64,000 nucleotides of DNA, taken from the IMG/VR virus record IMGVR_UViG_3300042319_002138, positions 62,001-126,000 of that record. One strand, written 5' to 3'. Positions within the stretch are counted from its first letter, which is position 1. Every line of letters starts with the position of its first letter. The notes under the pieces were generated by a model. It was not told where the DNA came from. It searched no databases and saw only the letters and a program-made list of their open reading frames with translations. The position numbers and the translations under genes are program-made. Below are positions 5,863 through 35,004 of this stretch, in pieces.

Positions 5863-6828
5863 TTATTTTTTTATTTTAGGGTGTAATTGTAATTCATTTA
5901 AACACTTTTCCCAATTTTCAAACAACATACCTCTATCATCGATATAGACAGTTGCCGGGAATTTATGGTTAGAAACCTCAGTTATGTATTTAGATAAACC
6001 ATATTTTTCTAACCAAGGGTTGATAACCTCTTTTGGTCTTGATGAGAGAATTTTAAGGATATAACCCTCTTCATGTAATTTCTTAAGAGATTCTTCAGTA
6101 CCTTCCATGGGAGGGTCGTAAGCATTGCCTAAACCTTTAAATCCTTTAGAATATTTATGAATAACACCATCAAAATCAATTGCGATGGTATTTCTTTTAT
6201 CTAAGTTGTTTACTTCCTTCAAATTAGATTCAATGATACCTAAGTCTTTTAAGTCTACTATAATCACGTCAGTACATTGTTCTATCGACCATTTATCAGT
6301 GTCTAGTGTTCTAAATGGTTTAATTGGTTCTTCGTATGGTGAGTCTATTCCAGTAAATTGTTTAATTTCACCTGCTCTCGCTTTTTTATATAACCCTTTA
6401 GGGTCACGTTGTTCACAAATATCTAAATCTGCTTTTACATAAACCTCTAAAAAGTTATCTCTACCAATAATATCTTTTGCTTTTTCTCTTTCTTCTCTAA
6501 ATGGTGAAATAAATGCTGTAATAACAATTACACCAGAATCAGATAAAAGTTTAGCTACCTCAGCAATTCTCCTAATATTTTCTTTTCTGTCATCATCAGA
6601 AAAACCTAAATCTTTGTTAAGGCCCATTCTAATATTATCACCATCTAAGATATAAGCTAATTTACCTTCTTTTTGGAGTCTAAGTGCTAATTCATTTGCT
6701 ATTGTTGATTTACCTGACGCTGATAACCCAGTTAACCAAATAACTGGCGATTTTTGTTTAATAAGTTTTTGCCTATCTTCTTTTGTTACCACATGTTTGT
6801 GTTCTATTAAATTTGTATTCATTTTCAT
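5863..6828 (-). CDS. cysC: Adenylyl-sulfate (APS) kinase fused to a C-terminal HAD-like domain
   Basis: WLTGLSASGKST P-loop, LDGDNIR, RDPKGLY, FTGIDSPYE; C-terminal IAIDFDGVIH…SSR…YIDDRG. Confidence 0.9.
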   Translation of the reverse strand: MKMNTNLIEHKHVVTKEDRQKLIKQKSPVIWLTGLSASGKSTIANELALRLQKEGKLAYILDGDNIRMGLNKDLGFSDDDRKENIRRIAEVAKLLSDSGVIVITAFISPFREEREKAKDIIGRDNFLEVYVKADLDICEQRDPKGLYKKARAGEIKQFTGIDSPYEEPIKPFRTLDTDKWSIEQCTDVIIVDLKDLGIIESNLKEVNNLDKRNTIAIDFDGVIHKYSKGFKGLGNAYDPPMEGTEESLKKLHEEGYILKILSSRPKEVINPWLEKYGLSKYITEVSNHKFPATVYIDDRGMLFENWEKCLNELQLHPKIKK

Positions 6829-8399
6829 ATTTTAATAAATTTATCATTTTTATATATAAAAGTATTTATAACTTTAATCCATTTACTAACCAAATTTTTA
6901 TTTTCCAATATAAAAGGGTGAAGTGTTTCTTTAAAATCTTTTTTAGATTCATCTAAATATTTTTCATCATTTTTTCTGGTATAACTTTCTTTATGGTAAG
7001 CAACAGAATAACCATCGTTATAGTTTTTAAACCCATTAGATAATACTTTTATACCTAACTCAACGTCTTCAAAACAATTATTATAATTTTCATTAAAAAG
7101 TCCCATTTTAATAAATAAATCTTTATTTATTAATAGTAATGCGGCTGTATTACAAAAAACTTCTCTAACAGTGTTATTAAAATTATAGTAGTTATTTAAT
7201 TTTTCGTGGGTTAGATTTATGGATGGATAAAGTTCTTCAAAATTGTTAGCATTTAAAACTTTATCGGAATGAACTATAACTCCATTATGTTGTATGGTGT
7301 TATTTGGGTAATGTAACCTACACCCAACAGAACCACAATCTTTATTTGTTAAAAAAACGTTTAACATAGAACTAAGAACATCATTTTTGATTTCAATATC
7401 ATTATTACAAAATAATAAAAAATCGTGACCGTTACCTACATAGTTTTTAACAACATCGTTATTTATTTTAGCGAAATTATAATAATCATACTCAATTATT
7501 TTTAAATTCTTATAATCTTCAAAACTAATTTTTATTTGGTCCAATTCTTCTTTTGTAGACCCAGTATCAGCAATAAAAATACTAAATATGTCATGGTCAC
7601 AATTACTGTAAAATGAATTAACACAATTTATTAAAAGTTCTAAATTTCCTTTTGTTGGTATTATTATTGCTACTTTTTTTAATTTTTTAAAATTTTTTCT
7701 TTTTATTTTTTCGTAAAATATATTTTTAGGTTTTAAATCTAATGGTAAATATTTTTTATATTTTTCTAAAAAAATTTCTTTTATTTTAAAAAATTCTTCA
7801 TTAGGTTTACCCTCTGAATTGTGTGTAATGTCGAAAGAAAATGTAACACCTAATTTTACACCCTCAATAAAATTACTAACACAAAAAGAATGGTCATAAA
7901 AATGAAACCCATTTATATCCTCGTCAAATAGTTTTTTAATTTTATTTTTATCAACAGAAATAAAGAGTCCATCTAGGGTGACTACTTCAATTAAATCATT
8001 AAATTTAGGTGAGTATTTGGTTAACGTTTTTTTGTTATTATTTCTGTGGTAAACTTGTCCCACCATAGTTTGGTCCCTTTTGCTCCAAAAAATACCTGAT
8101 TCAGACATGAAACAAGAACCGGCTTTACCTATAACACCAAACTCAGGATTTTTTAAAAAATCATTTAACAATTTTACACCCCAATTCTGTGATAAAAAAA
8201 TATCATCATGACAAAAAACTAGAATATCGTATTTAGATTCTTTTAATCCTCTATTGTAAATTTCTGATAAGGAAAACTCATTTTGATTATTATATAATAA
8301 TATTTCATATTCCTTTAAACCAATAGTTTTTTTTATGTGATTTTTAAACTTATCAACACATAAATTGTCTTTATTAGAAGAAACAATAACACTAATCAT
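6825..8399 (-). CDS. Two-domain GT2-family glycosyltransferase
   Basis: FCHDD, TLDGLF, FHFYD in domain 1; IIPTK, ADTGS, CNND, FEDVEL in domain 2. Confidence 0.8.
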   Translation of the reverse strand: MISVIVSSNKDNLCVDKFKNHIKKTIGLKEYEILLYNNQNEFSLSEIYNRGLKESKYDILVFCHDDIFLSQNWGVKLLNDFLKNPEFGVIGKAGSCFMSESGIFWSKRDQTMVGQVYHRNNNKKTLTKYSPKFNDLIEVVTLDGLFISVDKNKIKKLFDEDINGFHFYDHSFCVSNFIEGVKLGVTFSFDITHNSEGKPNEEFFKIKEIFLEKYKKYLPLDLKPKNIFYEKIKRKNFKKLKKVAIIIPTKGNLELLINCVNSFYSNCDHDIFSIFIADTGSTKEELDQIKISFEDYKNLKIIEYDYYNFAKINNDVVKNYVGNGHDFLLFCNNDIEIKNDVLSSMLNVFLTNKDCGSVGCRLHYPNNTIQHNGVIVHSDKVLNANNFEELYPSINLTHEKLNNYYNFNNTVREVFCNTAALLLINKDLFIKMGLFNENYNNCFEDVELGIKVLSNGFKNYNDGYSVAYHKESYTRKNDEKYLDESKKDFKETLHPFILENKNLVSKWIKVINTFIYKNDKFIKI

Positions 8400-27211: not shown

Positions 27212-27700
27212 ATGGCAGATTTGTTAATGAGAATGCCTGTTCCTTACGAACCAAAGAAAAAGAATAGGTTTATATTTAGATTCCCTACACCATTGGGTAT
27301 CCAAGAATGGTTTGTATCAACAGGTGCTAGACCGACTTATACAGCAGAAGAAACTGAGATTCAATTCTTAAATACTTCTACTTTTGTAATTGGTAGATTT
27401 ACTTGGGAAACAATCGATGTTACTTTCCGTGACCCAATCGGTCCTTCAGCTACTCAAGCACTTATGGAGTGGGTTCGCCTTCACTCTGAATCTGTTACAG
27501 GTAGACAAGGTTACGCAGCTGGTTACAAGAAAGATGTAGAGTTGGAGTTGTTAGACCCAACAGGAGTTGTTATCGAAAAGTGGATTCTACAAGGTACAAT
27601 GATTACTTCAGCTAACTTTGGTGATTTGGATTACTCTTCATCAGATATCGCTGATATCTCTGTTACTTTAAGATTTGACAGAGCAATTAGTGTATTCTGA
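27212..27700 (+). CDS. Tail tube protein (gp19-like)
   Basis: YEPKKKNRF, WETIDVTFRDPI, YKKDVELELLDPTGVVIEKW, FGDLDY. Confidence 0.9.
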   Translation: MADLLMRMPVPYEPKKKNRFIFRFPTPLGIQEWFVSTGARPTYTAEETEIQFLNTSTFVIGRFTWETIDVTFRDPIGPSATQALMEWVRLHSESVTGRQGYAAGYKKDVELELLDPTGVVIEKWILQGTMITSANFGDLDYSSSDIADISVTLRFDRAISVF

Positions 27701-27723: not shown

Positions 27724-27763
27724 ATACCCCTTTTATAAATTTTTATATGAAAGGGGTATTTTT
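27724..27763. terminator. Inverted repeat / terminator between convergent genes
   Basis: ATACCCCTTT…AAAGGGGTAT followed by Ts. Confidence 0.65.
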
Positions 27764-28211
27764 ATTTACTTATTATCCTAAAACCAATTAATTTTTTATT
27801 AAAAGTATTATCTCCTACTAAAAAATTTTGACTTTTATGATATAAACCTATATTGAATATTACTAAACGGTTTAATTTATTTTCAACTAATTGTTCATCA
27901 GCACCATCAAAGAAAATAGTACCTCCATTTGGTACTTCATTTAAATAAATAAACATTTTATATTTTTCATTACGTATTTTTTTATCTAAATGTTTATTTA
28001 CCGGTTCTGAGTTATTTGTCTTTGTTACATTATTATATAGACCAATCCAATCAGAATTTATATTTTGTATTTTTTCTTTATTTTCTTCCCAAAAATTATT
28101 AACAAAATTTTTATCACCAATAATACCTTGTCCATAAAAATTATCAATGTAGTCTTGGCAAGTTTTTAAAACTTCATCAGATAAAAAATTGTCTATATAA
28201 ATAACGTCCAT
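27762..28211 (-). CDS. 2OG-Fe(II) oxygenase
   Basis: HLD, FIYLN, GGT and distal His (LYHKS). Confidence 0.75.
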   Translation of the reverse strand: MDVIYIDNFLSDEVLKTCQDYIDNFYGQGIIGDKNFVNNFWEENKEKIQNINSDWIGLYNNVTKTNNSEPVNKHLDKKIRNEKYKMFIYLNEVPNGGTIFFDGADEQLVENKLNRLVIFNIGLYHKSQNFLVGDNTFNKKLIGFRIISK

Positions 28212-28231: not shown

Positions 28232-28264
28232 AAAAAAAAAGACCCTTTTGGGTCCCTTTTTTTT
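28232..28264 (-). terminator. Intrinsic terminator after the peptidase gene
   Basis: GACCC-TTTT-GGGTC flanked by A and T runs. Confidence 0.6.
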
Positions 28265-29279
28265 AATAATCATATCTGAAATACTCTTCATTATCTGTTC
28301 CGTAATTTACGATTGAATAACCTCCATTAAATTCATCATAATCCCATAGGTCAGAAAAATCTTCATCATCCTTGTAATGATAATCTAAGTCATTGTCATC
28401 ATTATCCTCATCGTAAAACAAGTCTTCTTTTTCTGTTAGAATAGTTTTAGTATTTTCTTTCTTCACAGGAGCCCAAGAAGTTGATACGTAACTAACAATT
28501 GGGTCTTCAACTCTTTCGTAGAAGTTTTCACCAAGAGTTTTATGAAGTTTAAGACCTAATTCAAAACCATTTTGAACCTCGTCAATAACAACATACTCAT
28601 TTGCTGTGTGGTAACGGTGATAACCTGCTGCCAAGTTCAAACACGAGAAACCAAACTTCTCCATCAAAGGCCAAATATCAGTATAAGGGTGACGTTCCCA
28701 ATGTGTGATACCGTGTTCAGTGATAAGACCACCTACTTTTGAGCCAAATTCAGATTTTTTACCAAAAAGTTGTTTACCCATAAGTGTCATACTCATTGAG
28801 TCTCCTTCAGGTGAATCATACTGAATAGCGTAACCAACATTTTTAAAGAACTCAGGGTCAGCTTGGCGTGAACCAACACAACCTACTTCTTCCGATACAA
28901 AGAATGCTGCTTTAACGTTGTCCAATGTATCCAACATTTCAAGACAAAGATAAACACCACACTTATCATCACCACCAATACCGGATGGTTTCATAGTTTC
29001 TTTATCGATACCAGTAAGAATAACTCTACCGTTTTCTTCTAATTGAACTACTTTAAAGTTTGGGTTAACTTTGTGGACAGTATCCGTGTGTGATACAAAA
29101 CAAGGGTACCATTCAGCTTTACCTTTAGTAACATAGATATTACCGATTTTATCTGTGTAATGCTCAAAACCTTTTTCTGTCAAGACATTTTGTAAGTAAG
29201 TAATCATCAACTCCTCATCACCTGAGTATGTAGGTACTGATAATACTTCTTTTAATCTTTGTAATTTTCTATCTTCCAT
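28263..29279 (-). CDS. M20/M28-family zinc peptidase
   Basis: SHTDTV, GGDDKCG, SEEVG, YH motifs; acidic tail. Confidence 0.85.
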   Translation of the reverse strand: MEDRKLQRLKEVLSVPTYSGDEELMITYLQNVLTEKGFEHYTDKIGNIYVTKGKAEWYPCFVSHTDTVHKVNPNFKVVQLEENGRVILTGIDKETMKPSGIGGDDKCGVYLCLEMLDTLDNVKAAFFVSEEVGCVGSRQADPEFFKNVGYAIQYDSPEGDSMSMTLMGKQLFGKKSEFGSKVGGLITEHGITHWERHPYTDIWPLMEKFGFSCLNLAAGYHRYHTANEYVVIDEVQNGFELGLKLHKTLGENFYERVEDPIVSYVSTSWAPVKKENTKTILTEKEDLFYDEDNDDNDLDYHYKDDEDFSDLWDYDEFNGGYSIVNYGTDNEEYFRYDY

Positions 29280-29301
29280 AGTGTGTTTTTTAATTATAAA
29301 G

Positions 29302-29332
29302 CAAATATACGTTATGTTTTTACTTTGGCAAA
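29302..29332 (-). promoter_or_regulatory. Bacteroidota-type promoter (-33 TTTG, N19, -7 TATATTTG)
   Basis: CAAATATA at 29302-29309 and CAAA at 29329-29332 on the + strand, 19 nt apart, upstream of the peptidase start. Confidence 0.65.
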
Positions 29333-29457
29333 ATTTTTGTTGAAAAAAAATTAAAACTTTTTCTATTTATAGAGAAATGAATAAATCTTTACTTTGTTAA
29401 TAAAGGGTTTAAGATTAAAATATAAAATAATATAAAATATAAAAAAAAGTTTTTAAA

Positions 29458-30219
29458 ATGTCAAATCAAGAAAACGAATTTAATTTTGATGCTCCATTCG
29501 ATGTACTAGAGTTACCATCAAAAGGATTATTGTACCCAGGTAGACCATCTACGGTTAGGGTAGAATATCTTACTGCTTCCGATGAGAATATTTTAACTTC
29601 ACCAAACTTAATTAAAAGTGGTAAAGTTTTAGATATTCTTCTACAAAAGAAAATTAAAAGTACAGAAATCTCTTTAGACCAAATGTTAGTTGGTGATAGA
29701 AACTCCATTATGATTTGGTTAAGAGCCACAGGATATGGTGAAATGTATCCAGTTAAAATGATGGACCCTGAAACAGGTGATGAATTTGAAACAGAAATTG
29801 ATTTGTCTGCTTTAGGTACAAAAGAATTAACTGCTGAACCAGATGAAAATGGTGAGTTTGACTTTTTCTTACCTAGAAGTAAAAAGAAAATTAAATTTAA
29901 ATTGTTAACTGTTTCTGATGAATCTTCTATCAGTAAAAAAACAGACCAAAGAAACAAAGCAACAAAATCTTTAATTAGTAACGCTTTAACATATAGATTA
30001 CAGGCACAAATTAAAGAAATTGACGGTAACAGAGACCCTGCTTTCCTTGCTAAGTTTATTGAAGTTATGCCAGCTTTTGATTCTCTAAAGTTTAGAGAAT
30101 ATTCAGACGAAATTGAGCCAGGAATAGAACTGGAGGTGGACGTGGAGGGACCATCTGGTCCATTTCGTAGTCCCTTTAACATTGGACTCAACTTTTTTTG
30201 GCCTAACGCTAGAGTATAG
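29458..30219 (+). CDS. Baseplate hub assembly / tail assembly chaperone (T4 gp26-like)
   Basis: LPSKGLLY, LTASDENIL, GDRNSIMIWLRATGYG, C-terminal FFWP; lies between tube and tape measure. Confidence 0.7.
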   Translation: MSNQENEFNFDAPFDVLELPSKGLLYPGRPSTVRVEYLTASDENILTSPNLIKSGKVLDILLQKKIKSTEISLDQMLVGDRNSIMIWLRATGYGEMYPVKMMDPETGDEFETEIDLSALGTKELTAEPDENGEFDFFLPRSKKKIKFKLLTVSDESSISKKTDQRNKATKSLISNALTYRLQAQIKEIDGNRDPAFLAKFIEVMPAFDSLKFREYSDEIEPGIELEVDVEGPSGPFRSPFNIGLNFFWPNARV

Positions 30220-30388
30220 AAAAAACCTAATAGAGGTAATCTATTATATGGTTAAACATATGCGTTTTAGTTATTCAGAAATTTTAAAAATGCCTGTTTG
30301 GGAAAGGAGAATCTATGTTGACCTTTGGCAAAAAGAAATGGAAGAACAACAAAAACAGTATAAAAATGCTCAAAGCAAAAAAAGATAA
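30182..30388 (+). CDS. Second tail chaperone ORF (gp51-like / 'GT'-type), possibly made by frameshift
   Basis: FSYSEILKMPVWERRIYV motif; overlaps the upstream ORF across a T7 run. Confidence 0.6.
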   Translation: MDSTFFGLTLEYRKNLIEVIYYMVKHMRFSYSEILKMPVWERRIYVDLWQKEMEEQQKQYKNAQSKKR

Positions 30389-30428
30389 AACAAAATTAAG
30401 GCATATTTATCAATAAAAAGAAATCAAA

Positions 30429-32201
30429 ATGCCTAGAAGTATAAAAGAAATACTTGAAGATTATAAACAAGAGGTAAATTCAGGCTCAAAAGGCCTGAAT
30501 TTTAGTGCATATAAAAATGAAATGATTACCGAAAAAAGAGTAAAGGTACCTGGTATTGAAAAAAACGTTGCTACAAGTGCTGGTGAAGGGTACTCAAACA
30601 TGGATGTTGTTAAACAAAATCTAAGGTCTTTAGGTTTTGACGTTGATGATTTGGGTAAACAAAAAACTGTTGCTCAATTAATGGCAGCACCTTTTGGTTT
30701 TAAATTTTCACTTCTTTGGCCTAAAGAAAATAAATGGGGTGAAAAAAGTTATGTTACTCTATCAATAAATGATAAAGCAGTAGAAGCCGATAGAATTGAT
30801 ACTAGAGCAAAAGTTTCTAACCCAAATAGTAATGGTAAATTAATATTAGAAACAAAATTAGGTCCGGCAATTATTTTTATAGACCCTAAAGAAATAGAAA
30901 GAACTTTAGGTGGTGATGCCGGTAAGTTACCACCAGGTAAAAAAGGTGAAAACTATAAAAGAATGTTAGAAGAAGGTGTTACTTATAAAGTACAAGTAGA
31001 TTCAGACGTTATTTTATCAGGAGAAGGTAATGAAGAAACAGAGGGGGAGGAAACAGAAAAAGAAATTCCAATTCCAGAAGAAATCGCTTCAGGTAAAAAT
31101 AGAAATGAAATTTTTAGATTATTACTAAAAGGTTTTGGTAAATACGATGGAGCTGTTGTTTATGGTGATGGTTTTAAAGACCCTGAAATGGCTAAAGAAT
31201 ATTCTAAACTACAAAGAGAAGTACAAAAGGGTAATGCTAGTAAAGAAGATTTAAAAGAGTTTAGGGAAAAGTCTGGTAGGGATTCTTACAGTATGATGGT
31301 TTCTAATTTAAGAAAGTCATTTCCAAATAACTTTTTAAAAAACTTATCAAAAGTTTTCCCTGAATTTAATATTCAATTTACAAAACAAAATGTCGAAGAA
31401 AATTATACTTTATCTGAAGATGAAAAAAACAAAGACAAATATAAAAGATGGAATTTAGTTTTTCCTGGTAAAGTTGTGGGGGGTCAGACCTTAGACAATT
31501 TAGATAAGAACGTTAGAGAATTTATGGTGGCAGTTAAAAAATGGTTTGCTGTACCTGTAAAGGGGCCTGATGGTAAAAAACGTTCTTATAGTATTTCTTA
31601 TGATGAAGACAAGGTAAATCAGTACTGGAATAATTTTTACGGTACTAAAACTGAATCTAAGTTAACACTTTCAAATATTTTAATGGAAATGTTAAAAGAA
31701 GAAGATGATACAAATGGTGGTAAAACAGTTAAACCCGATTATCTTTTATTAAAAATATTACCTGGTGGATTACAAACTATTGATGAAGGTCAAGAAGACG
31801 TTGAATCTCGTGAGGTGGGGGGTTCAAAAGGTTCTAAAAAACAACTTATTGATGCTGTTTTAGTTGAAGCGTCAGCTTTCTTTAAAGAAGGGGAGGACGG
31901 TAAAATAAATCAAAATGATTTAAATGTATTACCTGGTTATTCTAACGATAAAACTTATAGTGATAAAAAAGGTAAGTCCAATTTAAACATCGAATACACT
32001 AAGGACGGTAAAGTAACTAAAGGTGTTATAACCATTAAAAATAATACTAAATTAACTAATTTATTAACAGAAGTTATTAGGGGTGGTGATATGAAAATCA
32101 AAAAATCTAAAACAGATAGTAAATTTATTATCTTATATTATCCTTCACAAACAGAAGTTTCAAATAAAATTAATAACACTTGGAGTGAAATTTTAAAATA
32201 A
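30429..32201 (+). CDS. Hypothetical virion protein (probable head cargo)
   Basis: 590 aa; late motif upstream; shares NRN… and FPEF segments with 24726-27146. Confidence 0.55.
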   Translation: MPRSIKEILEDYKQEVNSGSKGLNFSAYKNEMITEKRVKVPGIEKNVATSAGEGYSNMDVVKQNLRSLGFDVDDLGKQKTVAQLMAAPFGFKFSLLWPKENKWGEKSYVTLSINDKAVEADRIDTRAKVSNPNSNGKLILETKLGPAIIFIDPKEIERTLGGDAGKLPPGKKGENYKRMLEEGVTYKVQVDSDVILSGEGNEETEGEETEKEIPIPEEIASGKNRNEIFRLLLKGFGKYDGAVVYGDGFKDPEMAKEYSKLQREVQKGNASKEDLKEFREKSGRDSYSMMVSNLRKSFPNNFLKNLSKVFPEFNIQFTKQNVEENYTLSEDEKNKDKYKRWNLVFPGKVVGGQTLDNLDKNVREFMVAVKKWFAVPVKGPDGKKRSYSISYDEDKVNQYWNNFYGTKTESKLTLSNILMEMLKEEDDTNGGKTVKPDYLLLKILPGGLQTIDEGQEDVESREVGGSKGSKKQLIDAVLVEASAFFKEGEDGKINQNDLNVLPGYSNDKTYSDKKGKSNLNIEYTKDGKVTKGVITIKNNTKLTNLLTEVIRGGDMKIKKSKTDSKFIILYYPSQTEVSNKINNTWSEILK

Positions 32202-32208
32202 GTTTTAA

Positions 32209-35004
32209 ATGGCTGACGAAAATTTTGGGCAAAATAAAAAAGACGCCAAAGAATACTACGATACCCAAAGGCAAATAGCCAAGGTTATTAAACAACAAAC
32301 CGAAAGTTGGTCAACATATGGTGATGCTCAAAAAACTGTTTCTGAAAATGCTAAACAGATACGAGATACACAGAAAAGAATTAATGAGTTATTAGCTGAA
32401 GGTTCTAAGGAAGCTAAAGCTGAAGCAGCTGAACTACAAAAACAAGTTGATTATACTAGAGAATTAAACAAAGAATTAGCTAAAACTAGTGTCCTATTAA
32501 AAGCTGGTGGTAAAGCCATTGGTAAATGGGGTATGGACAAATTGTCAAAAGGTTTTGACAATATTCTAGATAGGTACAACAGAATGGATAGGTCTTCTAG
32601 AGAAGCAGCTATCAACATCGGTATGTCCACCACTAGAATGAACCAGTTTAGAATGGTTGTGGCAAAATCACAGTCTAGTTTAACCGCGATGGGTGTTGAA
32701 CTTGAGAAAGCTGGTCAAATGCAAGAATCTTTTGCTGACGCTACAGGTAGACAAGTGATGTTAACCGAAAAGACATTGGTACAAATGGCTGCTTTAGCTA
32801 AGACAACTGGAATGGCTGAAGAAGAAATGGCTGGTTTAGTTGGTCAGATGGATTCTTTCGGTATGGGGGCACAAGCCTCGTCACAAGCAATAAGTAATAT
32901 TGTACAAAGAACAAATAAGTTAGGACTTAATACCAAAAACGTGATGAAAAAGATTACACAGAATGTGGGTCTTTTAAATAAACTTAGTTTTAAAAATGGT
33001 ATTAATGGTTTAGCTAAAATGGCTAGATATTCAGAAAAATATAAATTGTCGTTAGAAGCTGCAGCTGGTTTCGCTGAAAAGGTAATGAGACCTGAAGGTG
33101 CTATTGATGCGGCAGCTAATTTACAGGTGTTAGGTGGTAGTATGGCTCAAATGGGTGATGCTTTTCAGTTAATGGGTCAGGCAAGAAATAACCCTGAAGA
33201 ATTTATAAAGACTATCACAAAAGGTGCTGCGGAAGCTGCACAATGGGACGATGTTTCCAAAAGTTTTAAAGTTAGTGCTTATCAAATGGATAGGTTAAGA
33301 GAGGCGTCTGAAGCAACAGGTATCTCTGTGGAAGAATTAGCTGGGACTGCTAAACAAACAGCTAAGATGAATATGTTTGGTAACCTAATTAAAATTTCTG
33401 GTGATGATAAGGAATTCTTGTCGGGGATAATGGAACTTGACAGTAAAGGTCAGGCTTTCCTTTTTGATGAGAAGGGTCATAAACAATATTTAAAAGATTT
33501 AAGTGCAACAGACCAACAAGCTATAGCGGATAAATTAACCGCGGAAAAAGAAACTGAAAAAGAAAGAGCAATATCAAGACAAACTTCACAAGATTTATTA
33601 GTGAATAATTTAAATGCATTGTTAGATAAATTAATGCCAGCAATAGTTAAATTTGACGATAGTCTTAGACCTATGTTGGAATCTTTGTTAAAGAAACTTG
33701 GTTCATGGGTTGATTCTTTAATTAAAAACCCTTGGTTACTTAAACTAGCTTTAGGTCTATTGGTATTTGCTAAAGTGGCACCAATATTATCAGCAATTCT
33801 TTCCCCATTAGCTTGGTTGTTGAAGGGTAGAATGTTAGCTCGTGGTTTTAATGCAGGTGTTGCTAAAGGACCTTTAGGTGCCGCGGGTGCAGCTAAAAGT
33901 GGTGCACAAAGTGGTGCTGGTGGTAATATGGTTAAAGCTAAATCAGGTAAAATGTACAACGCTGATAGCCCACAAGGAAAAATGATTAGTACTAAAGGTG
34001 GGACTCAACCATTAGGTGGAGGTCAGTCTGGTCAAGCAGGTAAGGCTAGTCAAATGGGTGATTCAACGGGAAAATCGGCAACAAACATGTTAAAAGGAGC
34101 CGCAGCTATATTAATCTTATCAGCAGCTTTATTTGTATTCGCTAAAGCGTTACAGGAGTTTGAAAAGTTACAAAATGGGTGGCAAACATTAGCTTTAGCC
34201 GCAGTTAGTCTACTTGTTTTATCTGGAGCTTTATACGTTGTCGGTCAGATAATGAGTAAAGCAAGTACAAATATATTATTGGGGTCTGTAGCTATATTAG
34301 CCTTAGGTATTGCGTTGATACCGTTTGCTTACGCGATGTCATTACTCGCTGGTGTGGGTGTGGGTACTATGTTAGGTGCCGCATTAGCCCTTGGTGCTTT
34401 TGCGTTAGCAGCATTTTTAATGGGTGTGGCTCTTGTACCTATTTTATTAGGTGCTGTAGCAATTGCCGTTTTGAGTTTAGCTTTGATGTTATTCGGGACA
34501 GCTCTACAAATGGTAGCACCTGGAATGGAAATGTTCTTATCTTCACTTTCACAATTACCTTCATTAATTGGTCCGTTATTTATGTTTGGTCCGGCCTTAA
34601 TGTTAGCGTCTGTTGGTATATTTGCTTTATCAGTTTCTTTATTCGCGTTAGGTGCCGCTTGGTGGTTTGGTGGGAGTGCCTTTAAAGATTTAACACATAG
34701 TCTTGCAGCACTTAAAGGATTAGACCTTTCTGGTATGTCATCTTCCATAAGGGCAATAAATCGTGTTGATTTGGATAAGATTGAGGCTATTAAAGATTTG
34801 GCTTCAATGCTTTCTTTAGTTAGTTTGTTTGGTGGTATTAAAATTGAATTTGGTGATATCGATGTTAAAGGTACTATTAATCTTAAAGGAGGGAGTGGGG
34901 TTAGTAGAGGTACTGATTGGGTTAACGACCCTGTATTTGTTTCCAAACTTAAAAACCTTATTTGGGAATCTACCGGTAAAGGTAAAAAGGGCGGCAAATC
35001 CTAA
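32209..35004 (+). CDS. Tape measure protein
   Basis: Helical Ala/Gln/Lys-rich N half, long hydrophobic Ala/Leu/Gly-rich C region, downstream of tube and chaperones. Confidence 0.8.
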   Translation: MADENFGQNKKDAKEYYDTQRQIAKVIKQQTESWSTYGDAQKTVSENAKQIRDTQKRINELLAEGSKEAKAEAAELQKQVDYTRELNKELAKTSVLLKAGGKAIGKWGMDKLSKGFDNILDRYNRMDRSSREAAINIGMSTTRMNQFRMVVAKSQSSLTAMGVELEKAGQMQESFADATGRQVMLTEKTLVQMAALAKTTGMAEEEMAGLVGQMDSFGMGAQASSQAISNIVQRTNKLGLNTKNVMKKITQNVGLLNKLSFKNGINGLAKMARYSEKYKLSLEAAAGFAEKVMRPEGAIDAAANLQVLGGSMAQMGDAFQLMGQARNNPEEFIKTITKGAAEAAQWDDVSKSFKVSAYQMDRLREASEATGISVEELAGTAKQTAKMNMFGNLIKISGDDKEFLSGIMELDSKGQAFLFDEKGHKQYLKDLSATDQQAIADKLTAEKETEKERAISRQTSQDLLVNNLNALLDKLMPAIVKFDDSLRPMLESLLKKLGSWVDSLIKNPWLLKLALGLLVFAKVAPILSAILSPLAWLLKGRMLARGFNAGVAKGPLGAAGAAKSGAQSGAGGNMVKAKSGKMYNADSPQGKMISTKGGTQPLGGGQSGQAGKASQMGDSTGKSATNMLKGAAAILILSAALFVFAKALQEFEKLQNGWQTLALAAVSLLVLSGALYVVGQIMSKASTNILLGSVAILALGIALIPFAYAMSLLAGVGVGTMLGAALALGAFALAAFLMGVALVPILLGAVAIAVLSLALMLFGTALQMVAPGMEMFLSSLSQLPSLIGPLFMFGPALMLASVGIFALSVSLFALGAAWWFGGSAFKDLTHSLAALKGLDLSGMSSSIRAINRVDLDKIEAIKDLASMLSLVSLFGGIKIEFGDIDVKGTINLKGGSGVSRGTDWVNDPVFVSKLKNLIWESTGKGKKGGKS

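What the first reader, a model, noticed from the sequence alone, without database searches (positions are those of the whole stretch)
30182..30250. Candidate programmed +1 (or -2) frameshift in the tail chaperone pair
Seen: the gp26-like ORF ends AAC TTT TTT TGG CCT (NFFWP…stop). The next ORF lies in the +1 frame across the same T7 run (30193-30199), reading TTT TTT GGC CTA (FFGLTLEYRKN…), and has no ATG until 30248. Established: genes between tail tube and tape measure often make G/GT products by frameshifting (lambda -1, Mu -2). Inference: slippage on UUU UUU U gives an extended chaperone, in an uncommon direction.
Basis: partly seen in the sequence, partly recalled or inferred. Interest (0 to 1): 0.6.

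Follow-up and report, generated by a model that had tools for sequence, protein, structure and literature searches.

The report
Conserved +1 frameshift in tail chaperone
A lake-water phage most likely makes a short and a long form of its T4 gp26/gp51-type tail assembly chaperone from one gene, because some ribosomes slip one base forward on a run of seven U's; the same arrangement is kept in dozens of related uncultured phages, but no experiment has shown it.

Summary
ORF1 (29458-30219, 253 aa) belongs to the T4 gp26 family (PF12322). It ends 8 codons after an in-frame TTT TTT T (30193-30199). The +1 frame, open to 30388, matches the C-terminal part of T4 gp51 (phrog_634).

Comparative evidence supports a programmed +1 frame change:
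- In 75 of 77 evaluable related loci (36-100% identity) the conserved C-terminal peptide lies in the +1 frame. It starts directly after the T run, 14-20 nt before the ORF1 stop.
- TTTTTTY is nearly invariant, including at wobble positions.
- The wobble phase of conservation moves by +1 at the run.
- 34 of 75 unique junctions have no ATG/GTG/TTG upstream in the +1 frame. In 12, that frame opens only two codons before the conserved peptide.
- TTG 30182 and ATG 30248 are not conserved.
- T4 has two PF12322 genes, the short gp26 and the long gp51. The single-copy phages checked have the frame change instead.

Relatives with interrupted runs (TTT_C) and two loci with a -1 frame and an A_AAU_UUC heptamer favour ribosomal slippage over transcriptional slippage. 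This is inference only.

Predicted products are TAC-N (253 aa) and TAC-NC (309 aa). The kind is known (G/GT-type chaperone frameshift; T4-like chaperones, Vladimirov 2022, which I could not read). The +1 direction on UUU_UUU_Y is the unusual part.

The parts
29458..30219 (+). ORF1, the frame-0 product: gp26-like tail assembly chaperone, short form (TAC-N), 253 aa
   Evidence: PF12322 T4_baseplate E 1.8e-8, 34.7 bits against a cut-off of 24.5. phrog_150 baseplate hub E 1.1e-8. It is the only PF12322 match in the 226-kb virus record.
30193..30199 (+). Slippery run UUU UUU U (codons 246-247 plus the first base of UGG), the proposed +1 shift site
   Evidence: TTTTTTY is nearly invariant in 74 unique related junctions, including the frame-0 wobble positions (73/74 and 74/74 T). 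Run lengths are T7 in 64, T6 in 7, T5 in 1 and T3 in 2. The conserved +1-frame peptide begins directly after it.
30200..30388 (+). C-terminal extension in the +1 frame (62 codons plus TAA). Joined to ORF1 codons 1-247 it gives a 309-aa long form (TAC-NC), the gp51 equivalent
   Evidence: phrog_634 'baseplate hub assembly catalyst' E 1.2e-8 at profile positions 67-119. T4 gp51 residues 147-246 match positions 2-103 of the same profile, E 1.2e-23. There is a weak DUF6760 match. The extension is conserved as protein in the +1 frame in 75 of 77 loci.
30200..30219 (+). Dual-coding overlap: frame 0 ..WPNARV-stop and frame +1 GLTLEYR
   Evidence: Both frames show constraint here. C at +9/+10 gives the frame-0 Pro codon and T at +11 the +1-frame Leu codon. 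The ORF1 stop TAG sits inside the conserved Tyr-Arg codons TAT AGA of the +1 frame.
30182..30184 (+). TTG in the +1 frame, a candidate independent start that is rejected as the conserved start
   Evidence: It arises from the frame-0 Ile-Gly codons (ATT GGA). It is absent in L009-L022 (CTC GGA or ATC GGA). 34 of 75 unique junctions have no ATG/GTG/TTG upstream in the +1 frame.
30233..30250 (+). GAGGT (30233-30237) and ATG 30248: a possible secondary internal start in this phage only
   Evidence: The spacing resembles a Shine-Dalgarno site plus start codon. GAGGT is not kept in the nearest relatives (L007 has GAAAT and L008 has GAACA at the same codons). The ATG is replaced in L011-16, L019, L024-26, L001, L029 and L031.
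27212..27700 (+). Tail tube protein (gp19-like)
   Evidence: phrog_4542 tail tube E 3.9e-31. It is homologous to the gene directly upstream of the gp26-like gene in L001, L002, L029, L031, L032 and L033.
32209..35004 (+). Probable tape measure protein, 931 aa
   Evidence: Homologs lie downstream of the C-terminal extension in 28 related loci. In the Atlas feature search, 15 of 30 hits are PF10145 tape-measure clusters, score 0.94, which is a lead only. There is no Pfam, PHROG or NCBIfam hit.

Best explanation
One gene gives two tail assembly chaperone forms. Most ribosomes read ORF1 to its stop at 30217-30219 and make the 253-aa short form, the counterpart of T4 gp26. A minority slip one base forward while tRNA-Phe sits on UUU UUU U (30193-30199). 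tRNA-Phe can re-pair with UUU or UUC in the +1 frame. These ribosomes continue with GGC CUA ACG.. to the TAA at 30386-30388. The result is a 309-aa long form whose last 62 residues correspond to the C-terminal extension that T4 gp51 carries in one continuous frame. By analogy with lambda G/GT and P2 E/E+E', the shared N-terminal part would coat the tape measure protein and the rare C-terminal extension would recruit the tube protein. Shown here: the frame change, its position, and its conservation. Inferred: that ribosomes rather than RNA polymerase cause it, the exact codon, the efficiency, and the function of the two forms.
For: (1) Identity: ORF1 is PF12322 above cut-off, and the +1 ORF matches phrog_634, the gp51 family. 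(2) T4 gp51 is PF12322 (residues 1-201) plus a phrog_634 C-terminal extension in one frame, while T4 gp26 is PF12322 only. T4 has 2 PF12322 genes. HSE3, LIS04 and the window's own record have 1 each and show the +1 arrangement. (3) The HMM of the extension hits the +1 frame in 75 of 77 evaluable loci, from profile position 1, 14-20 nt before the ORF1 stop. (4) TTTTTTY is nearly invariant, wobble positions included. The low-information positions move from p = 2 (mod 3) upstream of the run to p = 0 (mod 3) downstream of it. (5) 34 of 75 unique junctions have no canonical start upstream in the +1 frame. In 12, that frame is closed two codons before the conserved peptide, so the shift window is about 26 nt or less. 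The first downstream start is often 87-99 nt inside the conserved domain. (6) Distant relatives keep the +1 relation without a homopolymer but with an in-frame TTT followed by C or T: immuto TTT CTT TGG, L024 TTT CTA TGG, L003 TTT CTA TTC, L028 TTT CTC, HSE3 TTC TTT CGT, LIS04 TTT TTT AGT. Only a P-site tRNA-Phe slip explains these. (7) L063 and L069 carry the extension in the -1 frame, with the T run replaced by GTA AAT TTC. This is an A_AAU_UUC heptamer in the phase needed for -1 slippage. (8) Frameshift-joined models of HSE3 and LIS04 align end to end with the HMM of 68 joined proteins, E 1e-47 and 1e-42. (9) The gene order tube, chaperone, tape measure is kept in relatives.
Against: There is no direct evidence: no peptide, reporter or ribosome profiling data. 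No stimulator was found. The downstream RNA fold has z = -0.62, no Shine-Dalgarno-like element is conserved at a fixed short distance, and no stop or known rare codon sits in the A site. In this window the T7 run would also allow RNA polymerase slippage or a -2 shift. GAGGT plus ATG 30248 could give an independent 46-aa product in this phage. L098 has the +1 relation without an evident slip site. The link to T4 gp51 rests on shared profile hits. Direct hhalign is weak, E 0.02, and my own HMM does not reach T4. The title of Vladimirov et al. [quoted passage not shown]
Confidence: 0.68

Rival explanations
1. Transcriptional slippage. RNA polymerase drops one U on the T7 run, so a minority of mRNAs carry U6 and encode the fused 309-aa protein in a single frame. 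The protein outcome is the same, but the step differs.
For: The homopolymer is T7 in 64 and T6 in 7 of 74 loci, longer than a single UUU_Y slip needs. T is avoided at position -1 (1 of 74) and at +7 (0 of 74), as if the run length were tuned. The title of Vladimirov et al. 2022 points to a non-translational mechanism for T4-like chaperone genes (cited; not read).
Against: Relatives keep the +1 relation with T runs of only 3-5 bases (TTTCTTTGG, TTTCTATGG, TTTCTATTC, TTCTTTCGT, GCTTTTTGG), too short for polymerase slippage. L063 and L069 switched to a phased -1 heptamer, which is a ribosomal signal. From my own knowledge, bacterial RNA polymerases slip appreciably only on runs of about 8-9 or more. 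Contigs from two RNA libraries carry T7 without a gap across the run, though contigs cannot show minor forms.
Confidence: 0.13
2. A -2 ribosomal frameshift on the U7 run. This reaches the same frame but gives one extra Phe (..NFFFGLT..).
For: U7 lets tRNA-Phe on the second UUU re-pair two bases back.
Against: It does not work in relatives with TTT CTA TGG, TTT CTC or TTC TTT CGT, where the -2 codon mismatches at its first position. The codon before the run (AAC) prevents tandem -2 re-pairing.
Confidence: 0.05
3. No recoding. ORF2 is a separate small gene that starts at TTG 30182 or ATG 30248, and the overlap with ORF1 is ordinary gene packing.
For: TTG 30182 exists. GAGGT lies 10 nt before ATG 30248. 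GenBank annotators of relatives called small separate ORFs: Mel-JY01 from the TTG, immuto and HSE3 from internal ATGs.
Against: The TTG is a by-product of the frame-0 Ile/Val-Gly codons and is absent in the 66-71% identical clade. 34 of 75 junctions have no canonical start upstream. In 12, the +1 frame opens only two codons before the conserved peptide. Neither the ATG 30248 equivalent nor the GAGGT is conserved. The 18 residues upstream of ATG 30248 evolve as protein, with synonymous changes and the wobble phase of the +1 frame. T4 gp51 carries the extension fused to the PF12322 domain.
Confidence: 0.08
4. Chance overlap, an assembly error in a homopolymer, or a decaying gene.
For: T7 runs are common in this AT-rich genome.
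Against: The same run and frame relation occur in about 75 independent assemblies. Four contigs are 100% identical across the site, and contigs from four further runs cover it with no gaps.
Confidence: 0.01

Closest known systems
Lambda gpG/gpGT (-1 at G_GGA_AAG), P2 gpE/E+E' (-1) and Mu (-2) tail assembly chaperone frameshifts (Levin 1993; Xu, Hendrix, Duda 2004; reviewed in PMC5009743)
   Same: Two products come from overlapping ORFs that lie between the tube gene and the tape measure gene. The shift occurs a few codons before the stop of the first ORF. The long form is a short C-terminal extension of the short form. The arrangement is conserved despite low sequence similarity.
   Different: The direction is +1 and the site is UUU_UUU_Y rather than an X_XXY_YYZ -1 heptamer. 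The N-terminal part is a ~250-aa PF12322 protein, not a ~100-140-aa G-like protein, and shows no detectable sequence relation to it.
T4 gp26 and gp51, identified as the T4-like tail assembly chaperones (Vladimirov, Gautam, Davidson 2022, Virology 566:9; known to me only through citing papers PMC10274946 and PMC12846349)
   Same: ORF1 is in the same Pfam family (PF12322), and the +1 extension is in the same PHROG family as the gp51 C-terminus.
   Different: T4 encodes the short and long forms as two separate, divergently transcribed genes. This phage has one gene plus a +1 frame change. PMC12846349 says that paper reports polyT slippery sequences in TAC-N genes of T4-like phages, so the arrangement may already be partly described.
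Proposed +1 chaperone frameshift of the archaeal myovirus HSTV-2 (cited in PMC5009743)
   Same: A tail chaperone pair of a myovirus with the second ORF in the +1 frame.
   Different: It is an unrelated virus. I did not compare the sequences or the slip site.
Known bacterial and phage +1 sites: prfB CUU_UGA with an upstream Shine-Dalgarno element; Listeria phage PSA, A118 and A500 CCC_UGA (PMC5009743); UUU-pyrimidine shift-prone sites in E. coli (Schwartz and Curran 1997, from my own memory)
   Same: P-site tRNA re-pairs one base downstream. Immuto-type relatives even carry CUU_U, as in prfB.
   Different: There is no stop codon in the A site (UGG, CGY or UAC instead), no conserved Shine-Dalgarno-like element three bases upstream, and no pseudoknot detected. 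The two consecutive UUU codons would allow both the P-site and A-site tRNAs to re-pair.

Membership tests
T4 gp26/gp51 family (Pfam PF12322 T4_baseplate) | Profile match above the curated gathering score | tested here: met
   34.7 bits against a cut-off of 24.5, E 1.8e-8, residues 32-231 on profile positions 15-200 of 219. Also found by the genome-wide search, 32.1 bits.
gp51-type C-terminal extension (phrog_634 'baseplate hub assembly catalyst') | Profile match of the +1-frame peptide to the same profile region as the T4 gp51 C-terminus | tested here: met
   Window extension: E 1.2e-8, profile positions 67-119. T4 gp51: E 1.2e-23, profile positions 2-103 (residues 147-246). Direct hhalign to T4 gp51 residues 223-247 is only E 0.02.
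G/GT-type programmed frameshift of tail assembly chaperones | Two overlapping ORFs, with the frame change a few codons before the stop of the first and the relation conserved among relatives | tested here: met
   The +1 frame holds in 75 of 77 loci, and the extension begins 14-20 nt before the ORF1 stop.
G/GT-type programmed frameshift of tail assembly chaperones | Conserved slippery sequence in a fixed codon phase | tested here: met
   TTT TTT Y is nearly invariant, including at synonymous positions. It is not the canonical -1 heptamer.
G/GT-type programmed frameshift of tail assembly chaperones | Position between the major tube gene and the tape measure gene | tested here: met
   Relatives show sheath, tube, gp26-like gene, small ORF, then an annotated tape measure gene. 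In the window the tube gene is 27212-27700 and the probable tape measure gene 32209-35004. Two reverse-strand genes and a 590-aa ORF are inserted between them. The tape measure identity is a lead, not proven.
G/GT-type programmed frameshift of tail assembly chaperones | No independent start for the second ORF | tested here: met
   34 of 75 junctions have no ATG/GTG/TTG upstream. In 12, the frame opens two codons before the conserved peptide. The window itself does have TTG 30182 and ATG 30248, so an extra free product cannot be excluded here.
G/GT-type programmed frameshift of tail assembly chaperones | Both products made in a fixed low ratio, required for tail assembly, and absent from virions | not testable with these tools
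   This needs protein analysis of an infected host, and the virus is uncultured.
Lambda gpT-like function of the extension (binding the tube protein) | Predicted or measured contact between the extension and the tube protein | tested here: inconclusive
   Complex prediction with the tube protein (162 aa) and the extension (63 aa) scored 0.00 and gave no verdict.
Transcriptional slippage sites | A homopolymer long enough for polymerase slippage, kept in all members | tested here: not met
   Runs of 3-5 T occur in immuto, L024, L003, L028, HSE3, L058, L081 and L085 with the +1 relation retained.

The most novel reading that the evidence does not exclude
UUU_UUU_Y is a distinct, stimulator-free +1 slippery heptamer on which both the P-site and A-site tRNA-Phe re-pair one base forward. 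It would be a mirror image of the -1 X_XXY_YYZ rule. Hundreds of uncultured myoviruses of the gp26/gp51 chaperone family would use it (at least 583 related loci in IMG/VR), and it has not yet been described as such.
Probability: 0.3. Interest if true: 0.7.

Novelty: new variant of a known kind. Interest (0 to 1): 0.55.

Why it matters
Frameshifting in tail chaperone genes is among the most conserved recoding events in phages, yet T4 was long listed as the exception (PMC5009743). These data show that relatives of the T4 chaperone genes with a single gene copy produce the gp51-like long form through a +1 frame change at a nearly invariant U run. This links T4's two-gene solution to the classical one-gene, two-product logic.

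In practice, the small downstream ORF is mis-annotated or missed in the relatives I inspected. Immuto and HSE3 start it at an internal ATG, Mel-JY01 starts it at a TTG, and LIS04 leaves the region empty. Gene callers could use the TTTTTTY plus frame rule to annotate it correctly.

For the recoding field, natural +1 sites in bacteria and phages are few. A family-wide site without an A-site stop or a Shine-Dalgarno stimulator would be a useful test case.

Tried and rejected
- **Nucleotide search:** blastn of 29000-31000 against cultured phages found no match.
- **RNA structure:** the fold of 30185-30300 gave z = -0.62, so there is no evidence for a stimulatory structure. I did not run an alignment-based fold.
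- **Upstream Shine-Dalgarno element:** the Gly codon at -9 to -7 often gives GGGGT, but its third base carries only 0.15 bits and the window has GGACTC. I rejected it as a conserved stimulator.
- **Predicted complex:** tube protein with the extension gave no verdict (score 0.00). This counts neither for nor against binding.
- **Solved structures:** the gp26-like profile found nothing in the PDB. NCBIfam found nothing for either ORF.
- **Direct link to T4:** my HMM of 68 joined proteins did not reach T4 gp51 or gp26. hhalign of the extension alignment against T4 gp51 was weak but landed at the right place.
- **The 590-aa ORF (30429-32201) as tape measure:** rejected. It has no relatives outside the window's sub-clade and no family hit.
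- **The 931-aa ORF:** no Pfam or cultured-phage match. Only the Atlas feature search points to a tape measure protein.
- **Read evidence:** only contigs were available, so minor RNA forms could not be assessed.
- **Literature:** Vladimirov et al. 2022 is not held. I know its content only through two citing papers that describe it differently.

Full report
**1. Observation**

- ORF1 runs from 29458 to 30219 (253 aa). It ends AAC TTT TTT TGG CCT AAC GCT AGA GTA TAG.
- The seven T's occupy 30193-30199, as two in-frame Phe codons plus the first base of TGG.
- The +1 frame is open from TTG 30182 to the TAA at 30386-30388. It reads TFFGLTLEYRKNLIEVIYYMVKHMRF..
- Its first ATG is at 30248, preceded by GAGGT at 30233-30237.
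- TTTTTTTGG alone is not unusual in this 31% GC window: 10 copies against 5.7 expected. The case therefore rests on comparison with relatives.

**2. What the two ORFs are**

- ORF1 is a member of Pfam PF12322 (T4_baseplate, the gp26 family), above the curated cut-off. It also matches phrog_150.
- The +1 ORF matches phrog_634, 'baseplate hub assembly catalyst', which is the gp51 family, at E 1e-8. It has a weak match to DUF6760.
- In T4, gp26 (208 aa) is PF12322 only. gp51 (249 aa) is PF12322 over residues 1-201 plus a C-terminal stretch that matches phrog_634.
- The window's +1 peptide hits profile positions 67-119 of phrog_634, which overlap the part matched by the gp51 C-terminus. T4 gp51 therefore holds in one frame what this phage holds in two.
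- Complete genomes agree with this. T4 has two PF12322 genes. Bacillus phage HSE3, Listeria phage LIS04 and the window's own 226-kb record have one each.

**3. Gene context**

- In cultured relatives (Flavobacterium phage immuto, Bacillus phage HSE3, Listeria phage LIS04) the order is sheath, tube, gp26-like gene, small or unannotated stretch, then an annotated tape measure gene. Microcystis phage Mel-JY01 has the same order, but its downstream ORFs are annotated only as hypothetical proteins.
- In the window the tube gene is 27212-27700. It is homologous to the gene just upstream of the gp26-like gene in those relatives.
- Two reverse-strand genes (27762-28211 and 28263-29279) lie between the tube gene and ORF1.
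- A 590-aa ORF found only in the window's sub-clade lies after the +1 ORF.
- The 931-aa ORF at 32209-35004 is conserved downstream of the extension in 28 loci. In the Atlas feature search it resembles tape-measure clusters, which is a lead only.

**4. Comparative test**

Using ORF1 I fetched 28 IMG/VR loci. Using an alignment of 13 of them (A1) I fetched 80 more, out of at least 583 relatives. I built an HMM of the downstream peptide from 17 loci and searched all three forward frames around the end of each gp26-like gene.

- In 75 of 77 evaluable loci the hit is in the +1 frame. It nearly always starts at profile position 1, 14-20 nt before the ORF1 stop.
- At the projected site, 70 of 75 unique junctions read TTT_T.
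- Over 74 unique junctions, positions 0-5 are T in 72-74 sequences, and position 6 is T in 66 and C in 8. This includes the two frame-0 wobble positions. Other frame-0 wobble positions carry 0.5 bits or less.
- The same table shows the low-information positions at p = 2 (mod 3) upstream of the run and at p = 0 (mod 3) downstream of it. The coding phase therefore moves by +1 at the run.
- Run lengths are T7 in 64 loci, T6 in 7, T5 in 1 and T3 in 2.

**5. Independent initiation**

- TTG 30182 is a by-product of the frame-0 codons ATT GGA (Ile-Gly). The 66-71% identical relatives have CTC GGA or ATC GGA at that place.
- L009, L010 and L018 have no ATG, GTG or TTG anywhere in the open +1 frame upstream of the site.
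- Across the wider set, 34 of 75 unique junctions have none. In 12 junctions a +1-frame stop lies only two codons before the first conserved residue, so the frame must change within about 26 nt that include the run.
- The ATG 30248 equivalent is absent in many relatives, and the first downstream start is often 87-99 nt inside the conserved domain.
- The GAGGT of the window is not kept in its nearest relatives.
- The residues between the run and Met 30248 (GLTLEYRKNLIEVIYY) are conserved as protein, with synonymous differences among relatives.
- An extra free product from ATG 30248 in this one phage cannot be excluded. It is not the conserved way of expressing this domain.

**6. Mechanism**

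All lineages share an in-frame TTT followed by T or C just before the conserved +1 peptide. This holds even where the homopolymer is broken:
- immuto and L085: TTT CTT TGG
- L024: TTT CTA TGG
- L025 and L026: TTT TTA TGG
- L003: TTT CTA TTC
- L028: TTT CTC
- HSE3 and L058: TTC TTT CG
- LIS04: TTT TTT AGT
- L081: GCT TTT TGG

tRNA-Phe reads both UUU and UUC, so a one-base forward slip of P-site tRNA-Phe explains every one of these. Polymerase slippage and a -2 shift do not. UUU-pyrimidine is, from my memory of Schwartz and Curran 1997, a known +1 shift-prone context in E. coli. With UUU UUU Y, both the P-site and A-site tRNAs could re-pair.

Two loci, L063 and L069, carry the extension in the -1 frame. 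In them the run is replaced by GTA AAT TTC, an A_AAU_UUC heptamer in the phase required for -1 slippage. This again points to ribosomes, and to selection for making two forms whatever the direction.

I found no stimulator. The downstream fold is unremarkable, no Shine-Dalgarno-like element is conserved, and the A-site codon is UGG, CGY or UAC rather than a stop. T is avoided immediately before and after the run.

Contigs from two RNA libraries span the run with no gap, so the majority form is U7. Contigs cannot show minor forms.

**7. Predicted products**

- The short form is 253 aa.
- The long form is 309 aa: ORF1 codons 1-247, then 30200-30385. The junction reads ..IGLNFF/GLTLEYR...
- Frameshift-joined models of HSE3 and LIS04 align without a break across the junction to an HMM of 68 joined proteins, E 1e-47 and 1e-42.
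- The roles are inferred from lambda G/GT: the shared part on the tape measure protein and the extension on the tube protein. The one test I ran, a predicted complex of tube protein and extension, gave no verdict.

**8. Comparison with what is known**

- Frameshifting in tail chaperone genes is classical: lambda -1, P2 -1, Mu -2. A 2016 review lists T4 as the exception and mentions a likely +1 case in the archaeal myovirus HSTV-2 (PMC5009743).
[quoted passage not shown] I could not read the paper.
- One citing paper says some T4-like phages carry a short gene and a long fusion gene instead of frameshifting (PMC10274946). This matches what I see for gp26 and gp51.
- Another citing paper says polyT sequences are slippery signals in TAC-N genes of T4-like phages, and calls them -1 signals (PMC12846349).
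- The general idea, and possibly the polyT site, may therefore already be in print.
- What I can say is this. In this window and about 75 relatives the change is +1, not -1. The site is UUU_UUU_Y. The four GenBank relatives I inspected do not annotate it as a frameshift.

**9. Verdict**

- A frame change to +1 at the run is very likely real, about 0.85.
- That it is a ribosomal +1 slip is the best reading, about 0.68. Transcriptional slippage is the main rival for the T7 lineages.
- It is a variant of a well-known kind, of moderate interest.

Noticed in passing
L063:2180-2300 and L069:2180-2300: Two related loci carry the conserved extension in the -1 frame instead of +1. The T run is replaced by GTA AAT TTC (an A_AAU_UUC heptamer in phase), and about 8 extra bases precede the conserved ..PEYR.. 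codons. This looks like a switch of frameshift direction within one family.
   Followed up: partly
L098:2330-2400 (and its relative L028:3850-3890): L098 has the extension in the +1 frame but no in-frame TTT-Y near the junction (..TTT ATT TTC ATC ACT GGT..). A TTG lies 21 nt upstream. How this lineage enters the frame is unexplained.
   Followed up: no
window 30429-32201 (+): A 590-aa Lys/Glu/Gly-rich ORF sits between the chaperone gene and the probable tape measure gene. It occurs only in the window's closest relatives (L004-L008, L020). It has no family hit and no match in cultured phages.
   Followed up: partly
window 27762-28211 (-) and 28263-29279 (-): Two reverse-strand genes are inserted between the tube gene and the chaperone gene. 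One is a 2OG-Fe(II) oxygenase-like protein (phrog_274/phrog_61, weak PF13640). The other is a peptidase (phrog_4191, E 2e-44; weak M42/M28). They are not part of the tail module in the relatives I inspected.
   Followed up: no
window 30197-30385 (+) and alignment A2: The extension shows weak but repeated similarity to Pfam DUF6760 (8 of 22 family members at E < 0.01, all below the cut-off). DUF6760 may be the stand-alone form of this domain. I did not examine its genomic context.
   Followed up: no
L001:3718-3943, L002:3758-3994, L032:3734-3904, L033:3708-3939: GenBank records of cultured relatives treat the extension inconsistently. In immuto and HSE3 it is a small ORF starting at an internal ATG. 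In Mel-JY01 it is an overlapping ORF starting at a TTG. In LIS04 a 230-nt stretch is left unannotated. None is annotated as a frameshift.
   Followed up: yes
window 7351-7446 (-): ARAGORN calls a 96-nt tRNA-Tyr (anticodon GTA) inside the 524-aa ORF 6825-8399. It is either a false call or an unusually long or intron-bearing tRNA.
   Followed up: no
window 29466-30191 (-): A 241-aa antisense ORF covers almost all of ORF1 on the opposite strand. It is probably a shadow of the coding frame. I did not examine it.
   Followed up: no
window 29300-30500 (reads): The virus occurs in many lake-water metagenomes from several studies. Short contigs of it occur in two metatranscriptome libraries (freshwater and estuary). 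A second, diverged relative is present in the same DNA runs: contigs with 90-95% likeness that run on into unlike sequence.
   Followed up: partly
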